Assembly: GCA_977020255.1 (NCBI GenBank)
Contig: CDROCS010001279.1
Coordinates: 248,001 to 312,000, forward strand
Direction of reading: 5' to 3'
Source: Obrimoposthia wandeli
Taxonomy: Eukaryota
Length of the DNA stretch: 64,000 bases
The number at the start of each line of letters is the position of its first letter. Position 1 is the stretch's first letter. The position numbers and the translations under genes were made by a program. Positions 24,301-44,959 of the stretch are shown in pieces. Under the pieces are notes generated by a model. That model worked only from the letters and a program-made list of their open reading frames with translations, did no database searches and had not been told where the DNA came from.

Positions 24301-27300
24301 TAATTTATCTTTTCAATAACTATTCTTTGTAAGTACTAAAGAAACTTTGAATTTGCTAATTAAAGTCACTAAAATATGCTGTTATACTTTTAATGATACT
24401 TTTAAGCTAAAACAGTCCTTTTTCCAATGTATTTCTTCTATTTGACTAATTTGAAAAAAAATAGTCAAATTATGATTAAGAAAACAAAATTTATATTATA
24501 ATGTGCACAAAATAAAATATTTAATTAATCATTTTGCTATACATTTGCCCTATTTAAAAATTATATTAATTAAAATAATAATTCAAAAAATAAAGTCCCA
24601 AATAAAAATAATTTTAAAATATTACTGACATTGCACATGATTAATTAACGTAATATGGTGATTTTAAAGAATTGAAATAAAAGCTAAAATCGTTCAATGC
24701 TATACCCCGGTTGCAATAATAATGAAAACATATTTTAAATACTATTAGATATTAAATTAATATATTTAGATAGTAAAATAAAGAGGAATCATCTCATTCC
24801 AATCTGATACTGTCGATATTTTCTCACGAAGTCATGAAATGGTGATCATATTTAAATGTTTATTTGATAACAATTACACTATTATTGCAATATTGAATAT
24901 CGTCGTTATACAAAAAACAGTTATGAATTAAGATAATACATAGAAATGTGAAAATATTCAGAATATTTCAAAAAAGCTAATTATTAGTTATTCAGAACTT
25001 TCAAAAAATTATATAAATTTGATAAAATAATATAATAAATTTGAAATTTATTATATTTTCAACATAATAAATATTTTAAAAACGGACTTATTTTGAGCTC
25101 GTACCGAAAAGCCTTTGGGAAGTTGAGCGTCAAAGTTTTAAGTCTTTCCTTTAATAAAAAATAATTATGTAACGTAGTGCTTCTTAGTGAGGACTGTAAC
25201 GGTCCTCCAGGGATCAAAATAAACCCATATTACTAATTACATTATATTATTACCGTTCCTATTCAAACTTAACTTAAGGTTTCAATACAAATTTCTAAAA
25301 TAAAAAAGCACAAGAAATTAAATAAATATCATAAAAAATCAATATTTAAGTAAATTTTGTTGAAATAAATTTTTTTTTATGGCTTCTGTTTTTAAAACGA
25401 AAACAAGACAATATTCTGTTGAATACATATTTATTGAATTAATTTATTGGGATTTATTGAACCTTCTTACGACCCTCAATTACCACTCTACATTTTGTCT
25501 AGACAAACTTTCGATATTGTGGCTATATAATATACTACAGTATATCAGGTCAGATGAAAAAGACGGGAGTTGATCAATAAAACAAGTTGCTCTTTAATTA
25601 GCTCTTTTGATTGCAAAACCATGAAAACTACACTCAGTTGGAAATAAACAATGAATTAGCGTTAAAGGTAATTATCTAATGTTCATAATGAATATTACAT
25701 TTTCACGCGTCCGTATTGATGACATTTCTGAAAATCTATTAAATCAGCTTCTATTAAATTTTTAATACATATCAAACATTGTCAGATACAAGGTTTACAC
25801 TAGAATTATGTTGTTTTTTAATAAATCTTTGAGATGTAATTTTTTCTTTCTTTCTTTTATTTGTATTTTAATAATGGAATACTATATAATGCGTTGAGGA
25901 TCATAATGTAAAAATAGAGACCACTGAATTCCGGAAAATTGATGTAAAAACACCTGTGTAATGTGTGGGTGAAAGTTAGAGAATTTCAATACGTTAAGGG
26001 ACGGTTGTCCAAAAAAGGTTAATAAACACTGATTTAAAGAATAATTTTTTTCAGGGATAAGAACAGAATCTGAACTCTGAACCTCATTGAACCAAAATTC
26101 CAAACGAATTTTGGCTTCAAAATAAAAAATCTAAAATGACAACTTAAATTTTTTTTTAAATTTAAATTAAAATTAACTAAAACAGTACTTAGTTTACATT
26201 TTAAAACATTAATGCTTTCATCAAGCAGCTCTAGTTGCTTTAGCAGTTTCAATGATGCAAGTTAGGGTTGCAAAAGAGCTCCTTAAAACGTTGTTTGTCA
26301 ATTAAATCAAACGACAAAAAAATCAATTCAGTATGCAGTCGAATCAATATTATTAAATTGGGAGTGTTAAATAAAGTAGACTGGTATTATAAAATCAATT
26401 ATTCCAATCACAGTAACCCAATTTATTCGTCACAACATAATTACAAACTGCGAACACGATCAATTATAGCACCCACAAAATAATAGGCTTAGTTATGGAC
26501 TAACCCAAGAAGATGCCATATAAATTAGTTTTACTACTATAAATGCGTTTTTGAATGGTTAGTATGTGGGGTTCAAATAGTTACAGCAATTCAATAATGT
26601 TGTCAAATTTGCACAAGTTGCGTAGAGAATTTAATTTTATATTATTCAAAAACTTCAATAATAAATATGTTGCAAAAATGAGAATTACAGTGATTTATTA
26701 ATCTGTGATTAATAATCAATATGCACACGAAACTTTTGATTTTGGAAGCAATATTTACATTTTAAAGTAGAATAATTATGGCATAAAGGAATTTCTCAAA
26801 GTCTACAGTATTTTTTGGCCCTATAGCCTACCTGGATATGCTTGTAGAAGGATGTGATGACAGTCTCAGCAACTTGGGTCTCCTTTAGAAGATTCTGCAT
26901 GCAGTTCAGACTATCTTGCATCTGCTGGATATAGATCACCGAGTTCTTCAGGATACCACCCTTATTCCGCTTGGACTCCCTAAATTACAAGATTACGTAA
27001 TAGTTACGCAATCCAGATATTAAATATTTTAATGCTTTTCTTATTGTTTTATAATTCAAAAATCTGTTCATTTGATTTAATATATTTTTGCTATTAGGTA
27101 TATTCAGAATATTTGCATGTATACAAACTGTAGTTCGTGAAATACTAGGAATTGAAGTTGTAACAATTAATTTTAACCACCCTGTATTAATGGTTCGTTT
27201 ACGTTTGTGGTTCTATCAGACTCCAGCCATGTTCACCATTATGTAGTTAACTGGCAGAAAAAACTCTATTTCACGATTCCCTTTGAGTTTTCCTTGTTAC

Positions 27301-30300
27301 TAGTGACTAATAAATGGAGAGTACACTAACTAAAGTCCCACATTGTTATTTCAGAAGCATGTAAACGTAAACTACCTAGTTTTCAAAATGCCGCAAACAA
27401 ATCGTTAAAACTAATCTATTTATGTACGTATTTACTGGTATATTTTAATTATTGAAATGAATTTAACCCGTTTTCTTGTAAAATTAAATTATCTAAAACG
27501 ACATTTAAAAATAACAATGATAAAATAGTTAAGACGGTAATTTAAATGCAAACCCTTTTTTTTTAAATGTGTCTTTACATTTGAGTTTTGCTCATTTGAG
27601 TTTTTCCACCTTTTGGTTTATAGCTTTGTGGATATTTGTTGAATCCCGGAAAAAAACATATTCAGACAGATGTACATTTATAGACACTTCTGTTCTTACG
27701 TGCTGAGAAAGAGCTTCTCTGGAAGAAGTTGACCGAGTTCCTGGATCTGATTGTTGATGTAGTCCCGCCGTTTTCGTTCAACTGAGATTGGAAAACGGAC
27801 TTAATCGTCGAATATACAACCAAATAAACTCGATATTTACTAAATACAGAAAAACCAAATTTAATATATTTTTGTTATTATTTTAGGAAATGGAACATTT
27901 TTTGTATTTTTTTCAGTTAATCAAATTAATAAATGATACTTAATAAAGCTCTGAAACAAATATAATTATTAAAACTCGACATTTGTGGACAGTCAATAAA
28001 AATAAATATGTACCGTAAAATATGAAACTTTTCAATATCATGCAGATAATAGCAGAGAACTATATAAATTATTTTTCTCGTTTTCTTATCGGCGTTATTG
28101 GATTAATCGGTGTTTTATAAATTGAATTACCTAATTCAACAGTCAAATGAATTTTGCACAAACTCTGAAGCCTTTTCCTCGGTACCGATAATTTCGTGAA
28201 ATCTTATAAAATGTTCACCGTAGAAAACTGTTATTTTACAGAAATATATATAAATTGTAAAATTTTATTACTTTTAAAAATTGAATTAAACCTACCAGAA
28301 GCTTCTAAATAAAGGGGAGGAATTTAGATCTTCACGATTACATAAAGTGGAATTTAAAGTGTTAGGTCCATTTAAATGCTAAAATTCAGGTGCATATTGT
28401 AAATGGAAGCGTATTATATTAGAATTTTACACTGGTTTTATATGTTATAATATACTTGTTTTTGCTTAAATAATCTACTTGTGAAATATGTAGTCTTACA
28501 TTTAGACGCTAATATGCATACACATATACGTTTATTTATTTTCTATGTAAGTTAATATGATTTCAAAGATGCACTCTCACTGACAACCAATCAATCATTG
28601 TAAAATATATATAGTAGAAATTTAAACATTATTTTGCTCGTGTCATTAATAAATTAAATATGTTAGATTTTCATATTTGGAAATATTTAGAAATCTAGAA
28701 ATAATAAGGTATAATGTAATTAATAAGAGATATAAGCACTATAGTAAAATTTGAATTTTTGTTAGTTTATCAAAATCCATCGTGGTTTAAAACTACAATT
28801 AAAACTGATTTCTCAGCTAACAAAACTGACTAATAGATAAAAGAATAATTTGTTGGAAATTTTATTTTTAGTCCAAGAAAGTGAATAATTGATAGGGCTT
28901 TATTGGTTTCATGGGTCTGATTGATTCCAATAACGAATGACATGTTAACCTGCTAATATTTACTAAATTTGCGTATATTTTATAAATGAATACAATTTTT
29001 CTATTTCTCTAACCACTATATAATAAACAAATGTTTATCAAATTTATTTTGGTATATCGCAATAATTTATTTTTCATTAAATTAAATTTAGATACAATTT
29101 TAAATAATATAATCCATTTAAATCACAAAATTTATTATAAAACATTTTACAGGCATCAAAATGTTTAAAATTTTCATTTGCCTATTTCAATGGTCAGTAC
29201 TGTAATATTCGGAGCGACACACGAACTGCAATGTCAGTATGAGTAAGTATTCAATCCTAGCTAGAAATGCCCGGATTATCTCGGTCATATCAGGAATTGT
29301 AGATTATAATTTTTCCACATTAACGAACGCTGATTACATCACTTTCTTTTGTACACACTGACTATCGCTAATATTGATTGAATCTCATATTATTCTATGA
29401 TTTGTGTTCACCATGTAAAACATGTATTATATAGATACTAAAAGTGTAAAATAAATTTAAAAAATATCAATGAAAAGGTATAATTCTTCTAATTAAAAAA
29501 GAACTCGGACAAACAGACATCTATTAGAATAGAAAATAATTGTATTTCTGACCTTATTTATTAACAGATTGACACTATATTAAATACTATATTGTAATAT
29601 CTAAAAATATTGAGCCACTTCTTATTTTTAGAAACTGCAATTAAATCGTTGTTCACGTTCCGATGTAGACATATAGTTGCTTAGCTGACGTATATAACGC
29701 TGATTGGTGGCCCATTCTCGAAGTATTAGAGCACCAGTTGTGTCTAAATTGAGGATGGACTTTTGGTGGTCTACTTTTTCTCGAATATCCAAACTACGGC
29801 TGCAAATTATCCGGCTCCACCGTCTAATCTTTGGAGACTTTATTTTAAAGAGTAGTTTACTAAAAAATCAAGGTGCAAAGAATTCATTAAAGACATTTTT
29901 CAATTCATTAAATAATGTAGTGTTATGCATTAAGCTTAAAAACGCTGTTACGATACAATACGATACAATTTTCTGCCTTTCTATTTAGCAGAATTCATAT
30001 TTTTATTTCTAATTTACATTACCGTAACATTTTTAATGAAAATGTAACTGAAAATCCTAACTTTATGGCCCTAGAAAAGTTGATATGTTGTAAATTATAA
30101 CCTATGCTCATATGAAAGTTCCATTTATCTGGAAGCTGATGTCAAAATTAGTTTTCGCATGGCGTTACAATCGGATTTGATTTTCTATTGGTGTGCCTAA
30201 AATTATTATAAAGAAACGTGACATGACAACATCAGTTTTGGGTTTAATTATGCTACTTCAGGGGTTTTCAATCAGCGGTACAAAAAGCTTTCTGTATATT

Positions 30301-33300
30301 GCTGCATTTTCTACGCTGTATTAATAAATAAAACAATAAACAGTCTTTTTGTATAAAGGCTATCTATTTGATGGCAATTGCCGAATGAGTGACACCCAGC
30401 ATCAATTCACACCATATGCGACATAGAATTTCTGTTACACACACTCAAATATTTTAACTTTTTGTACTTACAAGGGAAAATACACTGACATATATGAACA
30501 CAATTAGCATTCAAACTCGTAAAAAATACTATCACAAAAAATTGTTCGTTTTTTGGAAATTTTCAAAAAAATTAAATTATGTCAACTTTACTTAAGTTTT
30601 GAAAAAAATCTGATTTACGTTTGTTTAGCTGTTTTGTTTACACTAATCAGAAAAGCTCTTTAAATTCTGTCAAGATGCGAGTTAAGTCTGATGTCTCTAT
30701 GTTGAAAAATAAAATAAAAAATAATTTTATAAATGAAATTCCAAGGAAAAATTTATAAAATTTAAATCGGTAACTAAAAATGAAAATACATTTAGCAAAT
30801 ATCCATATACATAGTTTGGAATTTTTAGGTTTCCGTAATTGGGAGTATAGAACAGATACAGTTAAACATAAAAATGTTACTGCACAAAAATAGTATCCGT
30901 AATGGAGGGAATTTTTTTTTTAAATTGTTAAATTTGATGTTTGATTTATTGTATATCAAAGTTGGAAACTGGTCCCAGACCTCTCCAGTGTCATTTAGAG
31001 TTTTTTTTAACAACTGTTCACATTTTTTAAAGCAACATTTATGAACCATTATTTGATATTTTAATAAAGTATTTATTATTTGCACCTACTTTTTTAATCG
31101 TATTTGTAATATATTTTATTTATGCAAAATATTGAAAAGTTGAATTTAAGTCATACATAAATATATTACTTATAAAAAGTTATATAATCAGAAACCGTAA
31201 AAACCCATATTGGTTCATAAATATTCTGTTTACATTTAGAAATCTTGTGTTTGTATCTGAATCAAACTGTTGAATGATGTATATTAGTTGATTGAAGACG
31301 AGTATTAACAATGTCAATCATTTATATTTATAATCAAAATTGTGCCAAATTTTGCGGTAGTTAAAACACTGAGGAATCTAAATATATTTAGTAAATATAG
31401 CAATATCATTCATACCACATATTACATAACATAAAAATATTACAAACATTCAATCCTTAAATTAGATAACATCTCACAATCTCTACGATAGAAAAATAAA
31501 AACATAACTGATTACATAACTTAAAACAAAGTAGTAAATTATACATTAAAATACATGCCGTATTTTCCAGACTATAAGGCGCGGCTTTTTAACATTTAAA
31601 ATGGAAATATAACTGGAGTTCATCTATTACAAAAGTGCACAAAACATATGAATCAGATACCAAAACAATCACTATATCTAATTAAAATATATGAAACGCC
31701 TTTAATAAGGAAACTCCTGTTTTATTGGCATTCTAAAAGTTAAAAGGCCGCGTCTTATAGTCCGGAAGATACGGTAATATAAATTTTAAAATTTAGACTC
31801 CAGCCTGGCGAGATATAATTATAGTTTTCTGTAGTTTCCTAAAATATTTATTATATTTTACTGTTAAATTTCTTTATCTATAATCATTTTAATAAAAGAA
31901 GCAAAATGAAAAGTTTACTATGTAAATAAAATTGAAAGTCTAACGTCAAAGAGAGTATTTTTGTGCATATTTTTTATAGTTTGCTAAATAAATATCAAGA
32001 AAATTTTAGTTTAATTATTTATAAAATGTTAAAAATCCTGTTTCCATCGAAAAAGTTGTGTCAATTATATTTAAAAATAGTCAACGAAAATATAATTCTT
32101 CAGTTTTAATCATTTTAATTTGATTGGTTAAGAATATTAAATTGACGACGAATCTGCTAATATTTATAATAAGAAAGAAAATGAGTAAAAAAATGGGTAA
32201 TTTATTTTAAAGTTTGTAATATATTGAATTATAAGTTATTTAAAATAATTTAAATAAAATTTTGAGTTTAAACATCAAATAAAATATTTCAATTGTTACA
32301 ATTTGTAATAATAAATAAATGTTACAAAAATTAATTTGAATTTCAAATAAAATCTAAATTATTAATATTATTAGCTATCGTTTTATTTATATGAAAAAGT
32401 TAATATTACTTATTTATTAATATAATCAACATTTATAATTGTATAATATAATTCTGTCAAAACAAGTTTTGTTGGAAATTTTGATTATTTTAATAATGAA
32501 GTATCCCACTGTGAAAGGTAAATTTATTGTGAAATTAACAGTAATTTAATAAAATTTCACCTATTTTAATTTGAAGTTTTAGTTAACTTCAAATGTATGT
32601 GAAATAAATGAAAATGTAATTCAAAATCAAAGATAAATTTTGCATATTATTTGTAGTTTTTCTATAATAACCAAAAATAAAATCACATTTTTCACGATCA
32701 TGCAACAAATCAAACAATTGACCTTTGGAACAAAAAATGTCATCCATTAATTCTGTACAAAGTTCGTCGTGATGTATCTAATATTTTTATGTCCAAAAAT
32801 AGTGTAAATATTGCTTTTGTTCCACTATAAAAAGGGAGAAACAACACCTGAACAGTGTTAAGAATATCTAAATAGCACATGATACAACTGTGATACGACA
32901 TTCGTTAATTTAGATCTTGGAGTTGGACCAATAATATAAATGAAGAACAATTCAACATACAAACAATATACAATGTTTTATACAAGTAAGTTATTTGTAT
33001 ATGGTTAGCAAACTGTATATTTAGAAAATGATCATTTATTATAATAATGCACTATTATTTAATTTAGGTGAAAACTATATGGGTGACTTATAATGGTTAA
33101 TTAGTTCTTATAAACAGTGTCTTTTAAACCATTTTCATACCTTGATCCATTTTACTTACTGGTGCACAATCCCGAGCTCCAATAAGCGAACAAATATTTA
33201 CACTATATATTGTCATCGGAATTAAGATATTTTGTGATTAGGAGTGATCTAAATTTGAACCATAACCCATAAGTTGATAGACAGAAAGTAGAAAGGAAAA

Positions 33301-36300
33301 TTGGTCAGAAATGTGGGTTATGTGTAAAAGATTCAATCAATAAACTGGGATTTTTTATACGTAACTGAAAATGAATCCAGAATTTATTTTGTCAAAAGTT
33401 TTAACTATCAACTAATAAGAATAAATGAAATGAGAATTTTATAACAAAAGAAACCACATCAATTTTTATGAATGTCACTAAAAATCCAAATCAAAGAAAC
33501 CCGTATTTCCCGGGTATATACATATAAGCTTTACAATAGTTTTTCATTAGCAGTAAGAAAGTGAAATAAAATTGAATAATTCAGAATACATACGTGGTAT
33601 GTTCAATAAGTCCCTAGCCTACCATAGAAAAAAAGAAAGTAATCAAATATATTTTTATTTTACAACATGTAACTATATAGAGTCTATTTTTCGACATATG
33701 ATCAATTTTTGTCGACATCTTTTTTCCAGCGGATGAAAAGCTCCCGAAAAGCCTTTTCAAAGAAACCAGGCTCACATTTATTGAAAAATCACGAACATTG
33801 TTGATAAAATCATCTCTACTGTCGAACTTAATGCCTCTCAAATGCTTCTTAAGATACCGGAACATGTAGAAGTCACTAGGTAGAAAAAAGAAAAAAAGTA
33901 GAGAAAAGCCCATCTCCAGAATTGTCTGTCCTGTGAGGTTTGCAGTGTGCACTGACGCATTATCCTGCAATAGTCACAAAGGTGTGTTTCGTGTTTTGCG
34001 TCTGTTCTGTCTAGTAGTTGTTACAAGATTACTGTAGTATGTTGCATTGATAGTTCTGCCTTTCTCAGGGAAATCTAGTTTTATACACCCGTTGTGTCCC
34101 AAAACACTGTCAGCATTGTTTCTTTTCGATGATTTGTTCCCGGTCTCATTTTGTTTGACGGCTTCTCATTTGGAAACTTCCATTCCTTGGATTAACGACG
34201 AGATTCGGGCAAGTACATAGAAAGAGTTGTTTCATCAATTGTTACAATGTTACTTAGGAAACGGTCACCCCACTGTTCATAAAGTTTCAAATTTTCAACA
34301 CAACACTCCAATCGACGATTCATCATTTCGCCAGTCAAAAACATGGGCATCAAATCTTGAAGACAATTTTCGAATACCCATATCTTTCACCATTGTGTGA
34401 AGGCTTCCCACACTGATATTAAGACGAATGGACAGTATTTTAAAAGAGATTCTGCGTTCATCATTCACGATCTTGATTAATTTTTCCTTAACTTGATCTG
34501 GAATTTCTTGAGGTCTACCTGTTCTTTCATTATCAAACACAGAAGTGTAACCATTTTTAAAATACTTGACCCACGTTTTCACAGTAGCGTAACATGGAGA
34601 ATCGCCCTTGTACGTATCTTGAAGCATTTTATTTATTTCAGTTGCATTTAATCCTTGCAAAACAAAAAACTTGATAACACTCCTGTATTCCACTTGATTT
34701 ATCATAAATTTGAAAATGTGCCACTAAAATTATAAATAAGAGTAACACATTAAAATAAAGTATATAGTTTTTACTTATATATAATTATGTAGTTATATGA
34801 AAAAATCAATGATTGTATCTATCTTTTTTCTATGGTAGGCTAGGGACTTATTGAATGTACCACGTATCAAGACGTTCTTATTTAGATCAACACGCCTTCA
34901 GATTTGAACAATAAATCAAGTAATCCTATTGTATTGTTTTTTAACTTATTGTTTTTAATTCTAACTCCGTTTGTTTCGTGTCTTTTTAATATCAAAAAGG
35001 ACTTCAAAACTCAGTTCAAAATCTGGTATTATCGATATCAATAATATATATTCTATAGAAGAATGTACGCAAAAAATATACAAATACATCAATTTTTGAA
35101 TGATAACAGCCACATCAAAGTTCAGGGAATATTAGCTCCACAAAGATAGGAGCATAAGCAGCTCGAAATAATTATTCACAAAAAATACACTAACAATATA
35201 TGAATGTAATTTTATAGCGTACTAATTTTATGACCCAACATCATTAGATGTTTTTAAAATGAATAATCGGAACTTAACGCCAAATAAGAGTTCCAATGCT
35301 TCTTTTATTTTAATTAAAGACAACAAAATTTAAACAAGTGTAACCTAAGAATGAAAGAAACATGATAATTTTTTTAAAATTATATACAATATTCGAAATT
35401 ATACACAAACATCATTCTTCTATATAACCAACATAATTATCGAACCATTTTTTAGCGAATCACTAAATCAGAAAAAGCATTTTCGAAGCATTCTGAACCA
35501 CAATTGTCGAAGACTTGTTCAAATTCTTAATACAGTACAACTTTGTCTTCAAATATTTTTCTACATACATATTTTTGAGATGGTACAACATCCAAAACAC
35601 CTCTTGGAGCACGATCTGGGTTATATGGCGGTGTGGAATCAATATAAAGCATATTTTTGAAAATATTGTCAAAGTATATATTAGAGCATTATCATGAAGA
35701 TACCATACATAATGTTTCTAGTCTTTCTACTTTGCATTGTTACACATTTTACTAATTTAGTATAATATTCAGAATTCAACTTCACATACTTATCAGCAAA
35801 TAAAACATTATTATTCCTTGTCAATCAGAAAAAAATGGGTATCCATTGCTCCTTTGTGATTTGTACTGCGCCGTACTTTCCTTGTAGGCTTTTCTGGTGG
35901 AAACTTCAATATGACACAAACTCAATATGACACAACCTCAATATGACACAACCTCAATATGACACAACATCAATATGACACAACATCAATATGACACAAC
36001 CTCAATATGACACAACCTCTATATGACACAACCTCAATATGACACCACCTCGATATGAAACAACCTCAATATGACACCACCTCAATATGATACGACCTCA
36101 ATATGATACAACCTCAATATGATACAACCTCAATATGACACAACCTCAATATGACACCACCTCAATATGACACAACCGCAATATGACACAACCTCGATAT
36201 GATACCACCTCAATATGTTACAACCTCAATATGACACAACCTCAATATGACACAACCTAAATATGACGCGACACAACCTTGATATGATACAAGAATTTCA

Positions 36301-39300
36301 GTTAAATTTTCATTAAAACTTTTACGGTAATGTAAATTGGAGATAAAAATATAACATTTTGCTAAATAGAAAGGCAGAAAATTGTATAGTATCGTAAAAA
36401 AATCATACTTAACAGTTAGTATTAATTACTCTATTTAATGTTGTTAATTTCTCTTAATTTTCTGTACCAATAGTTCAAGAACTTATTTAATGAAGTCTCG
36501 AAGTCACAAAATGTTGATGCGTCAACAAATCATTTAAGAGGAAAAAAACTCTCATCCGCAAAAATGTAAATTTAATTCTCCTTCTATATTTATTTGCAAA
36601 TTAATGCTAGACGGAAATGCAAAATCTGTTTCTCTTAACAAACTCAATAAATTCAATAATGCAAACAGAACAATAATTATTAAAACTGAAAATCCGCAAA
36701 AGAATTATCTAATAACCAATGCTGTCAATTTAAATAAACGTCAGAGATCTGCTAGTTATTCTTTATCATCGGAATTAAAGACTGAACCATTTTCTCCAAA
36801 TGCAAAATTGGTAAGCATTTTTATGTGATTAATACCTAAAGATTATTTAATGTCAAGCAATTAAATTGTAAAATATAACATCAGAATTTTAGTTATTGGT
36901 GCATTTTACCTTACCAAGAAAATTAAATATTTCAAATAATACTAAATTTGTTTTATATGGTCTAAAATAAATTATGCATAAATCAAATAGCATATGTTTA
37001 ATATAGCATTAATTTCTTAAAAAATAAAGGAATTATTATTCAAATGCGCTCTACTGATTAGCAACTGAGTAGTTAACAGTATTTTTAAACAGAAACGTCT
37101 TAATGTGTAATTGGTAAATAATCTTCATTACTTTGTTCATAATTACTTTTAAAATGTTAAGATAAAATGGTGATGGATTGATGGAATCTTTTGCATATAT
37201 CTCACTGCTACCGACTTTAATATAACATTTTAGCTGCATTAATAACTTTAATGTAATTTGTTTTTCAAAAATAATGATTTCTGCGCTTCTTTATTTAATT
37301 TATGATGTTTATTTTTTATTTCATCAATTACATGTTAAATTTCTGCAATTTTTACAAATTTGAGCTTGAAATATGTATACAGAGAGTTCAGAGACAGGTA
37401 AATAAAACATAAGCGACACAACTCGATATGACACAACTCGATATGACACAACTCGATATGACACAACTCGATATGACACAACTCGATATGACACAACTCG
37501 ATATGATACAACCTCAATATGACACAACTCGATATGATACAACTCAATGACACAACTCGATATGACACAACCTCGATATGACACAACTCGATATGATACA
37601 ACTCGATATGACACAACTCGATATGACACAACTCGATATAACATAACTCGATATGACACAACTCGATATAACATAACTCGATATGACACAACTCGATAAG
37701 ACACAACTCGATATGACACAACTCGATATGACACAATTCGATATGACACAACCTCGATATGATACAACTCAATGACACAATTCGATATGACACAACCTCG
37801 ATATGATACAACCTCGATATGATACAACTCAATGACACAACTCGATATGACACAACCTCGATATGATACAACTAAACGACACAACTCGATATGACACACA
37901 TAATCTATTTGATACAACCTCGATATAGCTCAACCTCGATATAATGTCATGTTAATCTATAATACAAATTTATAGTTATTTTCTGAATACTGCAGTAGCA
38001 TATGTGTTACAAATACTCACTTCTGTTGTGGCAGTCTTTTTTGTTGCGGTCTCGCACCCATTGCAGTCTCTGGTCATCGGGGATATTGGAGGGAAACGAA
38101 GAGCTGGATGTGGCAGCTGCTGCTGCCGCAGAGTTTGGTGTGGTCCGACTCGAACTAGACGGTGTAAGAGTACTGTTGTTACCTCCGGCTTGCTTGTTGC
38201 TGGTACTAGTAACATTTAGCTGCTGTTGTTGCTGGGAGTTCTGATGGAAGTTCTGAAGTAACAGAGAGGTCTGCAGTAGGGTTGACGAGGCAGCCGTGTT
38301 ACTATTGCCGCTATGCTGCTGCTGATGTTGTTGTTGATGTGGCTGGAAGATGAAGGGGTTGGCCATGTTGGCAGGGCACGAGGTGGACGACTTGAGGTTG
38401 GCGGGTGACTGCTGTGAGTTGTGACTGTGATGTGACTGATGGTGCTGAGACACTGTCTGATTATGATGACGAATGTGAGAGTGCTGCTGTACCAATACAC
38501 CCTCCGGACTGCGGTTTTGGATGCACAGTTCGGGCATTATGCCGTCGTTGCGATTAATTTGCTCCATAATGTCCTGAGCCGATATCTGCGTGGAGATTCG
38601 ATCACTGTTTACCCAGTGTTAAATATGTTCTAGGACACATGCCACTGACAAAGTTAACCCCGGACAAGCTGAACCAGTAGTGAACTATTTTGAGGACATA
38701 TAAATTGACTGTCAGCAACCGTAAAATTTATGAGTGGCCATATGAAACCCAGATTATAACTGGGCATAAGTTTTATTGGATATGGTATTTTCGTAGAAAC
38801 AGTGATCTGAGATTTCCAAATATCAAATGCATTCATATGATATTTCAAATCTGACCTGAAATTTGGGGACACAAAATTTCATTTTGTACTGAACACCCCC
38901 AATCAATATTCAATTAATATAAGAAATCAACAAAAAATTAATTTTGGAAAAAACGTATTAGTCGGGAAGTGAATTGTTGAATCATCGGGTTTAATGTTTT
39001 TAGCATTTCCTTGGCCTATTTTACAGAATACAAACTGATTCAACACTTAAGGTTACTGTAAAATGTCATCAATTAAATCACAAAGATTTTGATGATCACA
39101 GGCAATACTTAATATGCAACATATATATTAATAAACTTTCCCTCTAAAAAATAAATAAAATAAAATCCGGGCCCCATATCCAAAGACTATAGATTGCAAA
39201 ACACAGCTCTAAAGATAAATTTCAACCTAATAAAATTATCCAAATTTAAATGAGACTGGCTGAGTCCATCAACAATCAAATTCTGAGCATAGTCGAGTAT

Positions 39301-42300
39301 ATATCGAAAATTAAGAATGTTCCTATATTAAAAGTAACATATAAATATTTTCAGATCTCCAAAATTCAAAATGTTAATAATAAAAGAGCAATAAATTTAT
39401 TTTAAAAGTTATACCGTATTTTCCGGAGGATTGTTCAAGGGTTATTTATTAATTGTAGTCTCTCTATGAGAATGTACATGTAATCTATTTGTGAGAAATC
39501 GGGTAAACTCTGAGGTTCATTTGCTTCATTTAGAAAATAAACTTTGATAGCCTTGAAATATAGAGTAGAAAGTTTGACAAATTCATTTTCTTTTAAAAAT
39601 ATGATCTATACACTCAAAGTAATATTCTTTTAAAAAGATTCCGGGAAAATAATGGTATTGCATACAAGCTCCAGGTTACGTCCAAAACGAAGAAAACTGA
39701 AAATAAGTTGGATCCACAAATCGATGCCGCTCTTTTGAATGTATTTCTCAGCGACAAGGGGGATGAGTATTTCCGGGGGTTTGATGGACATTTTATGTCA
39801 TTTAAGACAGAAACATCTTATAAATAAACCTTGTTATACATGTAGTTTAATTAATGAATAAATTAGATACTTGTTACCTGCAGTTCACCTAATCATTCGG
39901 AAAATACGGTGCCTAAATGTTTTAAATGGATTTATTTTTAAAATAATTCAAAAAAACGAAAGATTATTTTTTATCTTCAATATCTTGAAAAAGAAAATCG
40001 TGACACCGAGAAACCAAAGAGACTGGAAATTGGATAAATCAGTAAGTTTGGAATATAATCCAATTTCAGTCATTTAAAATTTGATGTCAGTTAAATTAAG
40101 CTCCAAAGGGGTAAACTATAAAACATTGTTGTCAAAGTGTCTAAACACACATCCCTCCGCCTAATATTTGTCCCCTGAATTCACCAATTGTTACTTGTTA
40201 ATGAGATCTGCTGTAGCAACAGGCGCATGGTGGTTAAGGTGTGTATATGTGGGTGGTAAATATTGCATAATTGACAGGCCAATATTTGAGCGCTTACAGC
40301 TCAAATCAGACTACAACTTCTGACTTCGTTTGAGTATACTAAACAGTCTCAGTTGTAGTTGTAGCTAATACATATGTTTAGTTTGTCCTGTTTTCATGAA
40401 AAGTTGTATATCGTGTCACTTGTTGAGGTTTGAGGCTCGTATTGTTAAGTCAACTTCTTTTAGTGAAAGTCAATGGACTCAAACCTCGGTAGAATCATTT
40501 AGAACAATCTGACGAAAGAAATTAATTTAGTTCATAACAACTTAGATTTCATTAATTTGATTTAAAATATATTTGAAAATTGATCAATGTAACTTTCAAC
40601 TATACTTTAAATTCGTAAGGATTTAAATCTCGTCCTCGGAGTTTGTTTATTTAATTACTAATTCCATCAGAAATTTTCCTAAATCCTATATGTTGGCTTC
40701 CAGAGAACTAAGAACGCTTTACTGAGAAACTTTATCACTCCGATTACACTGTAACTAATGTAAAGTAACCCACAACAATGGCATCATCTAAAATTACATG
40801 TGAAAAACTCAGATAAAACTGGTTAATATTCCGGGTTATCAATTAAATCACTTGCAAAAACTTCAACTAAGCCATCAGAATTATATTCAAATTAAAGAAA
40901 AGTGCTAGTATGGGTGAACATTCAATGAAGCTTCAAATCAGAATTAAATTCAAGATCCGAATTATTATCAAAAAAAATCTCTCACAAAATCGCAAACCTG
41001 GAGCAAACACATATATATGCATTTTGATAGCAACAATTATAACTGGGGTTGATCCGAAACTCTACAACAATTTACTGATGAATAAAAGAAACTGTAACAA
41101 TGTTGAGAAATTCTAGAAGCAGCCGACTTTACTATTCATAAAATATTACAAATAATAATGGAATTCACAAAGTGCCTTTAAGTAATAAATCAAAGATTAA
41201 TTATATATTATCGCTATTTTAAAGACAGGAAATACATAAGTTCCACTTACATCTGAGGTAGCGGTGATAGAAGGCTCGATCTGATTCCAGTCCAGAACAT
41301 CGTCATTACCCAGTTCGGAAAAGGCGAGATCCATCGGCTGTTGAGGTTATAAATAAGTTTTGATTTTTCACTATAAAGTTACAATCCGAGAATCATTTTC
41401 AAATGTGTTAATATCAAAAATGTCTTAGATCATCTCCTGATTTAACTGGCAGACATTCAGATAATTTTTATACTCACATTTAACTCCTTCAGTTGTAACA
41501 ATTTCACAATGATTTCGTAGTCTTTTATTTAATTACTGTTACCGTAACATTTTCCTCTGTTATATTTAGAATAGAAAGTTACATTTTTTGATTTTCTTTA
41601 TATTTTATACTTTTTCTTACACTTTTTAAATAATAAAAACAATCAAAGAAATGTATGACTCTATAATATCCTTACCAATATAACATGAACAGACATATTT
41701 TTAAAAGGTAAAACAATGTTTTTACAGTTGAATATTCACTAATTTCTGATTTACTTAATCATTATTTGATTTGGACACAATTTAATCTCCTGAATACCTC
41801 CTCTATTCCACTATTGACAATTTAGATGCTTTCGTATTTTTCTATATCATTAAGTACTTTGACGATAAATAAGATGCTAACTTTTTTATTATTTATTTGT
41901 TAATCAAAGAATTGCAGAAAATTGTGTTCTGTACTGAAGTATATTTTACTAAATGGATTTGATTTTAATTCATAGAAAAAATTACATTCATGAAATTGGA
42001 AAATACCATTTTTATAACCGAATATATATATGGAATCTTTTTATGGAAGTGTTACTTTCTCAATTTTCCATTCTTTTGTATAATTAAGTAGAAATTAGTA
42101 ATAATAACTAAATTGGCAAAAATGACTATTTTTAGAATAGACAATATGAATTATTCAAATTATCATCCTCAGATCAAAATATCGAAGGGATATCAAGTAC
42201 TTTCAGTATTTATTTAATCTTGGTTTTGAACTTTAATCGATCTCTTGAAAACAAATTTTCTCGAATACCCAAACTACGGCTGCATAATAACCGGCCCCAC

Positions 42301-43972
42301 CGTCTAATCTTTGGAGACTTTGGATTTTTATTTTAAAGATTAGTTTACTTAAAAAATCAAGATCCAAAGAATTCATTGAAGACATTTTTCAATTCATTGA
42401 ATAATGTAGTGTTATGCATTAAGCTTAAAAACGCTGTTACGATACAATACGATACAATTTTCTACCTTTCTATTTAGCACAATTCATATTTTTATTTACA
42501 ATTTACATTACCGTAACATTTTTTTATGAAAATTTTACTGAAAATCCTAACTTTATGGACCTAGAAAAGTTGATATGTTGTAAATTATAACCTATGCTCA
42601 TATGAAAATTCCATTTATCTGGAAGTTGATGTCAAAATTAGTTTTCGCATGGCGTTACAATCGGATTTGATTTTCTATTGATGTGCTTAAAATTTTTATA
42701 AAGAAAAGTGACAACATGACAACATCAGTTTTGGGTTTAATTATGCTACTTCAGGGGTTTTCAACCAGCGGTACAAAAAGCTTTCTGTATATTGCTACAT
42801 TTTCTATGCTGTATTAATAAATAAAACAAACAATATTTTTTGTATTAAGGCTATAAAAATTAACAATTATACAAAACTGTATTTGCATAAATTTTATAAT
42901 TTTAACTAGTTTAATGAGTTTTTTACTAATATTAACATACAATTTGACTCATCTAAAAGTCCTTTGGTGCCCATCAAATTATTTAACCAATTTAGACGTT
43001 TAGGAAATAATTATCCTCGATGTGTCAGGTCAAAATGTCGCTTATGTTTTATTTACCTGTCTCTGTGAACTCTCTGTATACATATTTCAAGCTCAAATTT
43101 GTAAAAATTGCAGAAATTTAATATGTAATTGATGAAATAAAAAATAAACATCATAAATTAAATAAAGAAGCGCAGAAATCATTATTTTTGAAAAACAAAT
43201 TACATTAAAGTTATTAATGCAGCTAAAATGTTATATTAAAGTCGGTAGCAGTGAGATATATGCAAAAGATTCCATCAATCCATCACCATTTTATCTTAAC
43301 ATTTTAAAAGTAATTATGAACAAAGTAATGAAGATTATTTACCAATTACACATTAAGACGTTTCTGTTTAAAAATACTGTTAACTACTCAGTTGCTAATC
43401 AGTAGAGCGCATTTGAATAATAATTCCTTTATTTTTTAAGAAATTAATGCTATATTAAACATATGCTATTTGATTTATGCATAATTTATTTTAGACCATA
43501 TAAAATAAATTTTGTGTTATTTGAAATATTTAATTTTCTTGGTAATGTAAAATGCATCAATAACTAAAATTCTGACGTTATATTTTACAATTTAATTGCT
43601 TGACATTAAATAATCTTTAACTATTAATCACATAAAAACGCTTACCGATTTTGCATTTGGAGAAAATGGTTCAGTCTTTAATTCCGATGATAAAGTATAA
43701 CTAGCAGATCTCTGACGTTTATTTAAATTAACAGCATTGGTGATTAGATAATTCTTTTGCGGATTTTCAGTTTTAATAATTATTGTTCTGTTTGCATTAT
43801 TGAATTTATTGAGTTTGTTAAGAGAAACAGATTTTGCATTTCCGTCTAGCATTAATTTGCAAATAAATATAGAAGGAGAATTAAATTTACATTTTTGCGG
43901 ATGAGAGTTTTTTTCCTCTTCAATGATTTGTTGACGCATCAACTCTTGGTGAACATTAGTTCGAGACTTCAT
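12200..43972 (-). CDS. MITF: MiT/TFE-family bHLH-leucine-zipper transcription factor (MITF/TFEB/TFE3 homologue), 9 coding exons, about 788 aa
   Basis: Exons 43646-43972, 41251-41337, 38021-38585, 27700-27781, 26832-26979, 17921-18251, 17483-17865, 13834-14147, 12200-12329. All introns are GT-AG with compatible phases (2367 nt = 789 codons including stop). Motifs MKSRTNVHQELMRQQ, KTENPQKNY, KS|PMDL, DDVLD, TSCPAN, KKDCHNR|IERKRRDYINNQIQELGQLLP, NKGGILKNSVIYI, HIQ|GLQEQLSSAGLSIP. bHLH intron positions match those recalled for vertebrate MITF. Which vertebrate paralogue it is closest to cannot be resolved. Confidence 0.9.
13834..14147 (-). CDS. MITF: MiT/TFE exon 8 (Gly-rich, DPVLSH motif)
   Basis: Acceptor tgcag|tgg, donor cg|gtgagg, 314 nt, phase 0 to 2; GC-rich island. 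Confidence 0.8.
14680..15030 (-). mobile_element. L2/CR1-type LINE 3' RT fragment
   Basis: Homologous to the better-preserved copies at 19640-20400 and 21640-21980. Confidence 0.55.
15230..15513 (+). pseudogene. Probable piggyBac transposase C-terminal remnant
   Basis: VDFLRKK...KRRRGYNCNKHTRSTCKK resembles a decayed piggyBac cysteine-rich domain. Confidence 0.35.
17483..17865 (-). CDS. MITF: MiT/TFE exon 7 (Ser/Gly/Thr-rich, DSPVLSS motif)
   Basis: Acceptor tacag|gc, donor cgg|gtaatt, 383 nt, phase 1 to 0; separated from exon 6 by a 55-nt intron (17866-17920). Confidence 0.8.
17921..18251 (-). CDS. MITF: MiT/TFE exon 6 (end of zipper, poly-Q tract)
   Basis: Acceptor ttgcag|ggt, donor a|gtgagt, 331 nt; GLQEQLSSAGLSIP aligns with MITF ELEMQARAHGLSLIP; QQQQQSP tandem units. 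Confidence 0.85.
19025..19065 (+). repeat. Tc1/mariner-type TIR, inverted relative to 27144-27184
   Basis: CAGGGTGAATCAAAATAACTGTTACAACCTCAATTCCTAGT. Confidence 0.65.
19640..20400 (-). mobile_element. L2/CR1-type LINE reverse-transcriptase 3' fragment
   Basis: HFHVYADDT (YADD) near 20165; NLRLLFES; MNCQINKVIRMCNMHIKNIYLMRKYLTTEIITMLTHANIISRLGFQNCVL matches the L2-type RT C-terminal region. Confidence 0.8.
21640..21980 (-). mobile_element. L2/CR1-type LINE 3' fragment, same family
   Basis: MNCQINKVIRTCNSHIQNINLRREYPTTEISTMLMHGIITSILEFQNFVL. Confidence 0.7.
23084..24050 (+). mobile_element. Degenerate mariner element
   Basis: TA|CAGGGGTTGTTCGAAAAG terminus; SSGDFNLED, DDQIEEILTENPHHSNREIA...MGK...WIP, FLHDNTRP, FPYPP..SNLAPSNYCLF. 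Confidence 0.8.
26832..26979 (-). CDS. MITF: MiT/TFE exon 5 (loop, helix 2, zipper)
   Basis: Acceptor tttag|g, donor cag|gtaggc, 148 nt; ESKRNKGGILKNSVIYIQQMQDSLNCMQNLLKETQVAETVITSFYKHIQ. Confidence 0.92.
27144..27184 (-). repeat. Tc1/mariner-type TIR, same family as 19025-19065
   Basis: ACTAGGAATTGAAGTTGTAACAATTAATTTTAACCACCCTG followed by TA. Confidence 0.65.
27700..27781 (-). CDS. MITF: MiT/TFE exon 4 (basic region, helix 1)
   Basis: Acceptor ctcag|tt, donor ac|gtaaga, 82 nt; (I)ERKRRDYINNQIQELGQLLPEKLFLS. Confidence 0.93.
29776..30363 (+). repeat. Interspersed ~590-bp non-coding repeat (family X), copy 1
   Basis: Direct repeat of 42256-42854, around 90% identical by eye. Confidence 0.85.
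31558..31774. mobile_element. pogo/Tigger-type MITE (217 bp)
   Basis: TIRs CCGTATTTTCCAGACTATAAGGCGCGGC and (reverse complement) CCGTATCTTCCGGACTATAAGACGCGGC; TA at right end, TG at left. Confidence 0.8.
33593..34864 (-). mobile_element. Full-length (1272 bp) mariner with frameshifted DD34D-type transposase
   Basis: ~42-bp TIRs CGTGGTA(TG/CA)TTCAATAAGTCCCTAGCCTACCATAGAAAAAA with TA on both sides; MINQVEYRSVIKFF...ERTGRP..., IVTIDET, LLQDNASVH, LPSDFYMFRYLK. Confidence 0.92.
35440..35900 (-). pseudogene. Mariner transposase 3' fragment, truncated at the minisatellite array
   Basis: KFPPEKPTRKVRRSTNHK (compare WKFPNEKPSNKMRPGTNHRK in the 33593-34864 copy), LHDNA, STPPYNPDRAP...KIFED. Confidence 0.6.
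35903..36292 (+). repeat. Minisatellite array, about 24 units of 16-bp CCTCAATATGACACAA
   Basis: Direct reading of tandem units with variants (GATACAA, GACACCA). Confidence 0.95.
36292..36394 (-). repeat. Inverted, more diverged ~100-bp fragment of repeat family X
   Basis: Reverse complement reads CGATAC..TACAATTTTCTGCCTTTCTATTTAGCA...TTTACATTACCGTAA...TAATGAAAAT, as near 29950-30055. Confidence 0.75.
36395..37418 (+). pseudogene. Inverted duplicate of the MiT/TFE N-terminal exon plus adjacent intron sequence (copy of 43036-44066)
   Basis: ATG at 36490, 6-nt deletion, nonsense TAA at 36535-36537, donor GT at 36811. Identical 62-aa spurious ORFs at 37051-37239(-) and 43217-43405(+) confirm the inversion. 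Confidence 0.92.
37414..37943 (+). repeat. Minisatellite array, about 35 units, mainly 15-bp CTCGATATGACACAA with 16- and 13-bp variants
   Basis: Direct reading; same orientation and family as 35903-36292. Confidence 0.95.
38021..38585 (-). CDS. MITF: MiT/TFE exon 3 (SCPA motif, Q/S/N-rich linker, start of basic region)
   Basis: Acceptor cgcag|ata (an in-frame alternative ctcag|gac lies 12 nt downstream), donor a|gtgagt after KKDCHNR. Confidence 0.88.
39414..39800 (+). mobile_element. pogo/Tigger remnant
   Basis: TA|CCGTATTTTCCGG terminus; RPKRRKL..PQIDAALLN.F resembles the CENP-B-type HTH. Confidence 0.45.
40855..40960 (+). mobile_element. Short L2/CR1 3'-end fragment, opposite orientation to the other copies
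   Basis: Reverse complement of the segment near 19680-19760. Confidence 0.5.
41251..41337 (-). CDS. MITF: MiT/TFE exon 2 (acidic activation-domain-like)
   Basis: Acceptor caacag|ccg, donor gat|gtaagt, 87 nt, phase 0/0; PMDLAFSELGNDDVLDWNQIEPS resembles MITF PMAML...MDDVIDDIISLESS. Confidence 0.82.
42256..42854 (+). repeat. Repeat family X, copy 2
   Basis: Direct repeat of 29776-30363. Confidence 0.85.
43646..43972 (-). CDS. MITF: MiT/TFE N-terminal coding exon (Rag-binding-like motif and ENP motif); a further upstream exon is possible
   Basis: MKSRTNVHQELMRQQIIEEEK resembles MITF MTSRILLRQQLMREQMQEQER; IKTENPQKNYL resembles THLENPTKYHI; donor tcg|gtaagc, phase 0; candidate acceptor aatag about 16 nt upstream of the ATG. 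Confidence 0.8.
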
Positions 43973-44959
43973 TAAATAAGTTCTTGAACTATTCGTACAG
44001 AAAATTAAGAGAAATTAACAACATTAAATAGAGTAATTAATACTAACTGTTAAATATGATTTTTTAGCATTATTAATTCATGTAAAACACAAAGCAGTTT
44101 TTTATAAAATTTTCAAAATAAATCAAATTAAATGATAAATATTGCAGGATTAAAACACGTGTGTAAGATATTATATAACTGCTCTAAAAAATTTAAAACT
44201 TAAACATATTCATGGATTTTGTGGTTTTCCCTTACATCTTCATTTTCATCATTTTTTCTAATTCTTTCAATCAACAACATTAAAAAAATATTATATTTCA
44301 TTTAATTTATATTCAATATTGTATAACTATGGATCAATTATGAAGTTTCGTCTGTGTCGTTTATTTTTCACATAAACTTTCTGCAAATAATAAAAATTAT
44401 ATACCTGTGAATTATTTACAAAGCTGGGAATAAAGAAGACTTATGAACTATTTAACATTTCAAACATATTTTCAAATAAAATCTATTGATTATTATTTTT
44501 TTTGACCCCGATCACTTTGCTGACAGTTGTCATTTAATATCTAATTTTGGTAACGGTTAAAAATAAGAACAATTAATCAATCAATCGTTTTTGCTACGCA
44601 ATAAATGTCCAGGTCTGATTTCTTATACGTTACTTTTCATATTATGACTCACATCTTACACCACACATTTCTTCATCTTTTCAAATTCCAAATTCGTCAA
44701 ATATGGTTAGAAATGAAAATAAAAGAAACACCATAGTCGGAATCAAGCTGTATTAAGTTGCAATGTAACTCAAGATTTATGTTCAAATACTAACTGATCT
44801 TCTTCCGTTCTTTATAACAAGGGCCTAGGCTTTAATTTATATATTTAAATTACATATTCTAAAATGATTATTTTTAGTGGTACCAATAAAAACAATCTAT
44901 GTACTATTATTTCCAGGGATTTCATATACGATATTTTTTTAAAAAGTGCAACACTTCTT

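What the first reader, a model, noticed from the sequence alone, without database searches (positions are those of the whole stretch)
35903..44066. A transcription-factor gene carrying an inverted copy of its own first coding exon inside intron 3
36395-37418 is the reverse complement of 43036-44066 (roughly 96-97% identical by eye). It covers the acceptor region, the whole N-terminal exon, its 5' splice site and about 610 nt of intron 1. In the pre-mRNA the two arms could form a ~1-kb duplex with a 5.6-kb loop holding exons 2 and 3, masking the exon-1 donor. Possible outcomes are endo-siRNA or A-to-I editing, back-splicing of exons 2-3, or isoforms lacking the Rag-binding N-terminus. The last would be analogous to vertebrate MITF-M, which lacks that region and is constitutively nuclear. 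The copy lies between minisatellite arrays and truncates a mariner relic, resembling transposon-mediated gene-fragment capture reinserted into the donor gene. The structure is seen directly; the functions are inference.
Basis: partly seen in the sequence, partly recalled or inferred. Interest (0 to 1): 0.85.

Follow-up and report, generated by a model that had tools for sequence, protein, structure and literature searches.

The report
Inverted first-exon copy within own gene
A bHLH-leucine-zipper transcription-factor gene really does carry a young, decaying, upside-down 1-kb copy of its first coding exon inside a later intron, but the mRNA seen is spliced normally, so it looks like an ordinary by-product of DNA repair that could form double-stranded RNA, with no function shown.

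Summary
36397-37418 (+) is the reverse complement of 43036-44066, with 21 substitutions and two indels in 1030 columns. These are the only two copies in the 1.35-Gb genome. Word depth in DNA contigs fits two homozygous copies (shared part 87; single-copy DNA and each variant type about 46).

A spliced 2.9-kb RNA contig confirms the minus-strand gene model and refines it. The "first exon" is two exons split by a 45-nt GT..AG micro-intron, and an upstream untranslated exon exists. That RNA carries only source-arm letters, has no A>G changes and shows normal exon 1-2-3 splicing.

The copy came from genomic DNA. It has no promoter, has a stop codon and a 6-nt deletion, and sits 602 nt into a 10.2-kb intron, inside a satellite array. 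Its junctions share 3-4 nt of microhomology, and it abuts an older inverted 104-nt piece of the same intron.

The mariner nearby is full-length and 1 kb away, and no transposon hallmarks were found. The bHLH-Zip domain is closest to TFEB, with USF almost as close. The N-terminus matches no MiT/TFE model, so the "Rag-binding" reading is unsupported.

Best reading: a real, probably neutral template-switch duplication. A 1-kb intramolecular duplex, circRNA or siRNA remain untested possibilities.

The parts
43036..44066 (-). Arm B, the source copy: 78 nt of upstream intron with the acceptor, exon 1a, the micro-intron, exon 1b, the donor, and 610 nt of the following intron
   Evidence: expressed and spliced in RNA contig X4 record 25
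36397..37418 (+). Arm A, the inverted pseudo-copy inside the 10.2-kb intron (27782-38020). The exon-1 equivalent is 36475-36810 and the intron equivalent is 36811-37418. It carries a stop (GAA>TAA at 36535) and a 6-nt deletion after 36502
   Evidence: A-type letters present in DNA contigs at single-copy depth
43891..43988 (-). Exon 1a (ATG at 43972-43970). Its 5' edge is a used splice acceptor; the RNA contig has 20 more nt from an upstream exon
   Evidence: table 8, record 25
43846..43890 (-). 45-nt GT..AG micro-intron, identical in both arms
   Evidence: contig skips it; sequence
43646..43845 (-). Exon 1b
   Evidence: record 25
41251..41337 (-). Exon 2, inside the loop between the arms
   Evidence: record 25
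38021..38585 (-). Exon 3, inside the loop. It is Q/H-rich and ends ...KKDCHNR. 38200-38585 is confirmed by RNA; the donor at 38020 is predicted
27700..27781 (-). Exon 4 (predicted): basic region and helix 1, IERKRRDYINNQIQELGQLLPEK
   Evidence: Pfam HLH E=1.2e-5
26832..26979 (-). Exon 5 (predicted): helix 2 and zipper, NKGGILKNSVIYIQQMQ...
17921..18251 (-). Exon 6 (predicted): end of the zipper (GLQEQLSSAGLSIP) and a Q-rich tail
36293..36396 (+). Older inverted 104-nt piece of intron 1 (87% to 42443-42546, 89% to 29954-30056). It abuts arm A in permuted order
   Evidence: (I4)
35902..36267 (+). 16-nt satellite array to the left of the insert; degenerate units run on to about 36292
37415..37898 (+). 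15-nt variant of the same satellite to the right of the insert, with 16-nt units up to about 37956. It ends about 65 nt from the exon 3 donor
42256..42854 (+). Intron-1 segment with an older direct duplicate at 29776-30363 (92%)
29776..30363 (+). Direct duplicate of 42256-42854, in the same large intron as arm A
33585..34867 (-). Full-length mariner with both TIRs. It is a neighbour only and not part of the duplication

Best explanation
Arm A is a real, young, DNA-level inverted duplication within the gene (about 2% diverged overall). It copies 1,022 bp from the 5' end of a bHLH-Zip transcription-factor gene.

Origin (inferred). A break or stalled fork in a satellite array at the start of a 10-kb downstream intron was repaired by copying from the gene's own exon-1 region. 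The mechanism would be template switching with microhomology, of the MMBIR/FoSTeS or templated end-joining kind. The far half of the arms was later homogenised, probably by gene conversion.

State of the copy (shown). It includes introns, so it is not a retrocopy. The 5' UTR exon and anything upstream of it are not included, so it has no promoter. It is decaying as coding sequence.

How it can act (inferred). It can only be expressed as part of the host intron. There its RNA is antisense to exon 1 and intron 1, so the pre-mRNA can fold into a duplex of about 1 kb that loops out exons 2 and 3. The likeliest effect is minor: some back-splicing of exons 2-3, or some Dicer or ADAR substrate. The main product is the normal linear mRNA (shown). 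I rate it as most likely neutral or slightly harmful, not a regulatory device.
For: - Structure and copy number.
- Two homozygous copies by depth: (87.3 against 39-56; each variant type about 46).
- Genomic origin: arm A keeps the acceptor, the 45-nt micro-intron and 610 nt of intron.
- Decay: a stop, a 6-nt deletion, at least 5 non-synonymous against 2 synonymous changes, and 3.2% divergence in the coding part.
- Junctions: GACA is shared between the arm end and the satellite unit at 37418|37419; TAA is shared at 36396|36397.
- Insertion is inside a satellite that also forms an array of more than 2.4 kb on another contig.
- The locus is prone to this kind of event: an older direct 600-bp duplicate and an older inverted 104-nt piece come from the same intron.
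- Uneven divergence: 20 of 21 substitutions lie in the first 554 nt (K2P 0.037 against 0.002; binomial P = 5e-5).
- Normal mRNA: X4 record 25 joins 1a-1b-2-3 with B-type letters only and no A>G changes.
- Duplex potential: 1008 pairs, with perfect runs up to 383 bp in the intron part and 178 bp in the exon part.
Against: - All read evidence comes from one sample and from k-mer contigs, some of them chimeric between the arms (X1 record 8, X3 record 24). The long-range arrangement therefore rests on the assembly alone.
- The 104-nt piece is 11-13% diverged and joined in permuted order (42443|44066). A single simple template switch does not explain that, so the history is more complex than stated.
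- The near-identity of the intron-derived half is exactly the part that would flank exons 2-3 for circularisation. That is also what selection for pairing would produce.
- No small-RNA data, no raw RNA reads and no second individual or species were available, so neutrality is an inference.
Confidence: 0.68

Rival explanations
1. The inverted copy is a working RNA element. Within the pre-mRNA it pairs with exon 1 and intron 1 and so acts in one of three ways. It may drive back-splicing of exons 2-3 into a circRNA of about 650 nt. It may feed Dicer to make siRNAs antisense to exon 1, giving self-limiting autoregulation like a built-in hpRNA. Or it may shift output to isoforms that lack the N-terminus.
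For: - The geometry fits circRNA rules. Complementary intron sequences of 610 nt flank exons 2-3, and 30-40 nt suffice in reporters (PMC4201285; Drosophila laccase2, PMC4617980).
- The intron-derived half of the arms is almost identical (1 substitution in 468 nt).
- hpRNAs are known to be born from inverted fragments of nearby target genes (hp58/CG17385, PMC10317233).
- Duplex potential is high.
Against: - The only RNA contig is the normal linear mRNA containing exon 1, at fair depth (19.7). No back-splice or strand-change joint appears for X4, and there are no A>G differences.
- The exon part of the copy is diverging freely (3.2-3.7%).
- The intron after exon 1b ends about 4 kb upstream of arm A in the transcript, so it may be spliced out before arm A is even transcribed (inference).
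- Gene conversion explains the identical half without any selection.
Confidence: 0.15
2. Assembly artefact: arm A is a misplaced or mis-joined haplotype, or a chimeric read, and is not a second genomic copy.
For: - The assembly has uncollapsed duplicates elsewhere (identical bHLH loci on C2378 and C4492).
- Arm A lies between satellite arrays, where assemblers do err.
Against: - Depth is doubled over the shared part (87.3 against 39-56), and both variant types are at full single-copy depth. Haplotypes of one locus would each have half depth.
- The arms are 5.6 kb apart, 2% diverged, have defined microhomology junctions and lie far from contig ends (window at 248-312 kb of its contig).
- The window has no gaps.
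- X1 and X2 hold 86% of the sampled 31-mers of 36300-38600.
Confidence: 0.08
3. Transposon-mediated capture: a Pack-type DNA element, Helitron or mariner-associated event picked up the exon-1 fragment and reinserted it.
For: - The genome is rich in transposons: more than 100 copies of the neighbouring mariner, piggyBac-like ORFs at about 5-6.7 kb, and a very high-copy repeat at 40.8-41.2 kb.
- Some Helitron-like elements carry internal tandem arrays (own knowledge).
Against: - The mariner is complete, with both TIRs, and ends 1,035 nt before the array.
- No TIRs or target-site duplications bound arm A or the 600-bp duplicates.
- The other array of the same satellite shares no flanking sequence with this one.
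- The fragment occurs nowhere else in 1.35 Gb.
Confidence: 0.05

Closest known systems
Drosophila hairpin-RNA (hpRNA) loci born from inverted fragments of a nearby target gene (e.g. D. simulans hp58 / CG17385; PMC10317233)
   Same: An inverted duplicate of an exon fragment of a protein-coding gene, lying close to its parent, that could form a long near-perfect RNA duplex complementary to the parent mRNA.
   Different: hpRNAs carry both arms in their own separate transcription unit and are defined by Dcr-2-dependent 21-nt siRNAs. Here one arm is the functional exon itself, the other lies in a later intron of the same transcript, the loop is 5.6 kb with two exons, and no small-RNA data exist.
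circRNA biogenesis promoted by complementary repeats in flanking introns (Liang & Wilusz 2014, PMC4201285; Drosophila laccase2, PMC4617980)
   Same: Reverse-complementary intron sequences (610 nt, almost identical) flank internal exons 2-3. They lie about 1.7 kb upstream of the exon 2 acceptor and 0.6 kb downstream of the exon 3 donor.
   Different: The repeats are a gene-derived duplication rather than transposon copies, and they extend into an exon. No back-splice junction was seen; only contigs of one RNA run were available.
Complex rearrangements by replication template switching or microhomology-mediated repair (FoSTeS/MMBIR, templated insertions); from my own knowledge, not read here
   Same: A kilobase-scale templated insert from a nearby site on the same chromosome, in inverted orientation, with 3-4-nt microhomology at junctions, more than one templated piece, and a tandem repeat as the recipient site.
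   Different: The two pieces differ in age (11-13% against 2% divergence), so there was probably more than one event. The mechanism cannot be shown from one genome.
MiT/TFE family (MITF, TFEB, TFE3, TFEC) of bHLH-Zip factors
   Same: The bHLH-Zip aligns end to end with TFEB, and the zipper aligns without gaps down to the '(H/A)GL' motif (E=1.5e-12). It also has the KKD.HN and NKG.ILK.SV.YI motifs.
   Different: The basic region, helix 1 and loop are as close to USF (E=1.5e-11). Neither the N-terminal domain (PF15951) nor the C-terminal domain (PF11851) of the family is detectable. Several paralogues share the unusual ERKRRD[YF]IN basic region.

Membership tests
MiT/TFE transcription factors | bHLH-leucine-zipper domain closest to MITF/TFEB/TFE3 | tested here: inconclusive
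   Pfam HLH on exon 4. For the spliced 107-aa bHLH-Zip against the PDB: TFEB 1.5e-12 (50.9 bits, residues 3-101), USF1 1.5e-11, MITF 9.4e-11. Taken separately, helix 1 ranks USF first and helix 2 ranks TFEB/MITF first.
MiT/TFE transcription factors | N-terminal MITF_TFEB_C_3_N domain (PF15951), which holds the Rag-binding region | tested here: not met
   No Pfam hit for the exon-1 ORF or the spliced 138-aa N-terminus, even at E<=10. No match to full-length TFEB 7ux2_P. No credible hit among 1.84 billion representatives. No PF15951 hit in the genome, though that search had no positive control. The only resemblance is short motifs (SR..LMRQQ, ENP.K..L) recalled from memory.
MiT/TFE transcription factors | C-terminal DUF3371 domain (PF11851) | tested here: not met
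   No Pfam hit on the C-terminal exon ORFs. No genome hit, again without a positive control. No PDB match.
hpRNA / endo-siRNA hairpin locus | Long inverted repeat with arms homologous to a protein-coding target | tested here: met
   1,022-nt arms, 98% identical, covering exon 1.
hpRNA / endo-siRNA hairpin locus | Dicer-dependent 21-22-nt small RNAs from the duplex, and a primary transcript that rises without Dicer | not testable with these tools
   No small-RNA run was found for this organism.
Repeat-driven exonic circRNA | Reverse-complementary sequences in the introns flanking the circularised exons | tested here: met
   Intron parts 43036-43645 and 36811-37418 flank exons 2-3.
Repeat-driven exonic circRNA | Back-splice junction (exon 3 donor joined to exon 2 acceptor) in RNA | tested here: inconclusive
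   No such joint appears for X4. Only assembled contigs of one probable RNA run were available, part of the joint table was not shown, and contigs drop rare forms.
Transposon-captured gene fragment (Pack-type element or Helitron) | Element termini (TIRs or Helitron ends), target-site duplication, and further copies of the carrier | tested here: not met
   No TIRs at the boundaries. Only two copies in the genome. The satellite at C384 shares no flank with this one. The mariner is intact and 1 kb away.
Template-switch / microhomology-mediated segmental duplication | Short microhomology at breakpoints, a nearby template, and several templated pieces | tested here: met
   GACA at 37418|37419 and TAA at 36396|36397. 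The template lies 5.6 kb away. A second piece (104 nt) adjoins. This is consistent with the mechanism but is not proof of it.

The most novel reading that the evidence does not exclude
The gene carries a natural self-targeting hairpin embedded in its own intron. Each pre-mRNA would fold exon 1 against its own antisense copy and yield siRNAs, or an exon 2-3 circle, that lower or re-route output of this bHLH-Zip factor. This would be a one-gene negative-feedback device. The near-identical intron half of the arms would then be maintained for pairing.
Probability: 0.08. Interest if true: 0.7.

Novelty: new member of a known kind. Interest (0 to 1): 0.3.

Why it matters
If the duplex forms in vivo, this locus would be a natural version of the intron-spliced hairpin constructs used for silencing. 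It would also be a snapshot of how hairpin-RNA or circRNA-producing structures are born from a gene's own sequence. As it stands, it documents a clean, datable example of repeated intragenic template-switch duplication at a satellite array. It also corrects the gene model, adding a 45-nt micro-intron and an upstream UTR exon. On present evidence it does not change what is known about MiT/TFE regulation.

Tried and rejected
- Exon-1 peptide homology. phmmer against 1.84 billion representatives gave only two spurious repeat proteins. PDB and Pfam searches of the ORF, of exon 1a, of exon 2 and of the spliced 138-aa N-terminus gave nothing relevant.
- Genome searches with PF15951 and PF11851 were empty, but their controls were empty too, so they are uninformative.
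- No paralogous exon 1 exists elsewhere in the genome.
- ESM Atlas look-alikes gave only a generic bHLH signal.
- No Rfam family matches in 26-46 kb.
- The look-up of encoding contigs found nothing for either arm's ORF.
- Transposon capture is rejected.
- Haplotype artefact is rejected on depth.
- I considered simple extension from the older 104-nt homology as the source of the 1-kb piece. It is rejected because synthesis would have continued into 42442 and below, not into 44066.
- I did not lay reads on arm A itself. Only one read-laying run of 6 kb was allowed, and I avoided the satellite arrays.
- No run on record as RNA was found. X4 is inferred to be RNA because it covers exons only and holds a spliced contig.
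Full report
**1.

The repeat finder on 34-46 kb reports three adjoining inverted pairs. A MAFFT alignment merges them into one block. A = 36397-37418 on the + strand equals the reverse complement of B = 43036-44066. The block has 1030 columns with 21 substitutions, a 6-nt indel and a 2-nt indel, giving K2P 0.021.

A search of the whole 1.35-Gb assembly finds only these two copies. The remaining hits are 60-200-nt matches at 70-87% to old dispersed repeats that lie within the intron part. The window has no N.

**2. Is it real DNA?**

All public runs that hold the stretch come from one sample and one study, so they are not independent of the assembly. They were, however, assembled differently, as k-mer contigs. 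I laid them on 38200-44199.

- In X1, single-copy pieces have word depth 39-56.
- The piece covering the identical part of the arms (43036-43505) has 87.3.
- At 43506-43576, A-type letters have 46.2 and B-type letters about 47.

Two haplotypes of one locus would each show about half the single-copy depth. A heterozygous insertion would give 1.5x over the shared part. The numbers fit two homozygous copies.

Some contigs switch between A-type and B-type letters across long identical stretches (X1 record 8, X3 record 24), as expected from bubble-popping. I put the chance of an artefact at about 8%.

**3. The host gene**

X4 covers exons only. It holds 0.88 of the exon 3 words but only 0.27 of 36300-38600, and it contains a 2,913-nt spliced contig. 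I therefore read X4 as an RNA run.

Its record 25 lies on the minus strand in four pieces: 43988-43891, 43845-43646, 41337-41251 and 38585-38200, and it continues past the laid stretch. Three conclusions follow.

- The 5' edge at 43988 is a used acceptor, with 20 nt of an upstream exon in the contig.

Downstream I predict three more exons.

- Exon 4 (27700-27781) joins ...KKDCHNR to IERKRRDYINNQIQELGQLLPEK. It hits Pfam HLH at 1.2e-5.
- Exon 5 (26832-26979) encodes NKGGILKNSVIYIQQMQ and the zipper.
- Exon 6 starts at 18251 with GLQEQLSSAGLSIP.

The intron holding arm A is 27782-38020 (10.2 kb), and arm A begins 602 nt from its 5' end.

**4. Which family?**

The spliced 107-aa bHLH-Zip matches TFEB best (1.5e-12), and the zipper part of that alignment has no gaps. 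USF1 (1.5e-11) and MITF (9.4e-11) are close behind. Helix 1 alone prefers USF. Helix 2 alone prefers TFEB/MITF.

The genome has paralogues with the same unusual ERKRRD[YF]IN basic region, and it has separate USF-like exons. The N-terminal 138 aa match no MiT/TFE model and no solved TFEB. The C-terminus matches nothing either. So the gene is "MiT/TFE-like bHLH-Zip". The "Rag-binding N-terminus" and the MITF-M analogy rest on a few remembered residues and are not supported.

**5. What the copy is**

Arm A contains 78 nt upstream of the acceptor, both exon-1 parts, the micro-intron (identical in both arms), the donor and 610 nt of the next intron. It was therefore copied from genomic DNA, not from mRNA. 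The upstream UTR exon and anything before it are not included, so the copy brought no promoter.

As coding sequence it is decaying. TNVHQE has become SHKM through a 6-nt deletion and four substitutions. Glu18 is now a stop. There are two more non-synonymous and two synonymous changes, for 3.2% divergence in the coding part. The mRNA carries only B-type letters.

**6. How it probably arose**

Arm A sits inside a satellite. A 16-nt array lies at 35902-36267 and a 15-nt variant at 37415-37898, with 16-nt units again up to about 37956. The same satellite forms an array of more than 2.4 kb on contig C384, but the two loci share no flanking sequence.

The right junction shares GACA between the arm end and the satellite unit. 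The left junction shares TAA.

Directly left of arm A lies an inverted 104-nt piece (36293-36396) from further down the same intron. It is 87% identical to 42443-42546 and 89% to 29954-30056, and it is joined in permuted order (42443|44066). The same intron segment (42256-42854) also has a direct 92% duplicate at 29776-30363, with no TIRs.

So the 5' end of this gene has been copied into the big intron at least three times. Kilobase-scale inverted templated inserts with microhomology at a tandem repeat are what replication template switching or templated break repair produce. That is my own knowledge and an inference here. The different ages show there was more than one event.

The mariner at 33585-34867 is complete, with both TIRs, and ends 1,035 nt before the array. 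Nothing points to transposon capture.

**7. Uneven divergence**

Twenty of the 21 substitutions lie in the first 554 nt of arm A, which hold the upstream 78 nt, the exon part and the start of the intron (K2P 0.037). The last 468 nt have one substitution and a 2-nt indel (K2P 0.002). The binomial P is 5e-5. Recent gene conversion between the inverted arms is the simplest cause. Selection for pairing of the intron parts cannot be excluded from one genome.

**8. How it can work**

Arm A has no promoter, so it is transcribed only as part of the host intron. There it is antisense to exon 1 and intron 1. The two arms can form 1008 pairs (-1533 kcal/mol), with perfect runs of 383 bp in the intron part and 178 bp in the exon part. 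The spliced exon 1 alone can form 285 pairs with arm A.

This geometry matches two known kinds of system.

- Intron complements that promote back-splicing of the enclosed exons (PMC4201285, PMC4617980). Here that would give an exon 2-3 circle of about 650 nt.
- Hairpin-RNA loci born from inverted fragments of nearby genes (PMC10317233).

Against a strong effect, the RNA contig seen is the normal linear mRNA with exon 1, at fair depth and with no A>G changes. Also, the intron after exon 1b ends about 4 kb before arm A in the transcript, so it may be spliced out first (inference).

My estimates are as follows.

| Proposition | Probability |
|---|---|
| The structure is real | about 0.9 |
| Some detectable dsRNA or circRNA by-product forms | about 0.4 |
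| The element has an adaptive role | about 0.1 |

**9. Verdict**

This is a confirmed, tidy structural oddity of a known kind. It is an intragenic inverted segmental duplication with hairpin potential, in a repeat-rich genome and at a locus with a record of such duplications. No function is shown. The transposon-capture reading is not supported, and the Rag/MITF-M reading is unsupported. Interest is modest unless RNA data show that the hairpin is processed.

Noticed in passing
window 43846-43890 (-): A 45-nt GT..AG micro-intron inside what looks like one open reading frame. An RNA contig splices it out. Such tiny in-frame introns could mislead ORF-based gene calls in this genome.
   Followed up: yes
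window 40800-41199: A very high-copy dispersed repeat just upstream of exon 2. X1 word depth is 15,000-38,000 against about 50 for unique DNA, with many loose ends around 40865-40911. X4 also has short contigs on it.
   Followed up: no
window 29776-30363 and 42256-42854: An older direct duplicate (92%) of a 600-bp intron-1 segment, lying in the same large intron as arm A. It has no TIRs and occurs only in this window. A 104-nt inverted piece of it lies at 36293-36396.
   Followed up: partly
window 33585-34867 (-): A full-length mariner (about 1.28 kb, both TIRs, HTH_48 and Transposase_1 remnants, frame broken). More than 100 copies at 85-94% identity occur across the genome.
   Followed up: partly
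L028/L034 (C2378) and L029/L035 (C4492); L027 (C681:229700-230317): Paralogous bHLH loci share the basic region KKE[ST]HNR[IV]ERKRRDFIN. C2378 and C4492 give the same translated ORF and the same match scores, so they are an uncollapsed haplotig or a recent duplicate. The C681 copy has the whole bHLH in one 206-aa ORF with no intron and may be a retrocopy. USF-like exons lie at C368 and C4810.
   Followed up: partly
L011 (C384:168452-170900): The same 16-nt satellite (CAACCTCGATATGACA) forms an array of more than 2.4 kb on another contig. The checked flank (the array runs off the other end of the locus) is unrelated to those in the window.
   Followed up: partly
window 5000-6700 (-): ORFs that, judged by eye, resemble a piggyBac-type transposase (e.g. 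6400-6666). Not checked with any tool.
   Followed up: no
runs X1-X4: Run X4, of unrecorded kind, behaves as RNA: it covers exons only and holds a 2.9-kb spliced contig. It is the only expression evidence available for this locus.
   Followed up: yes
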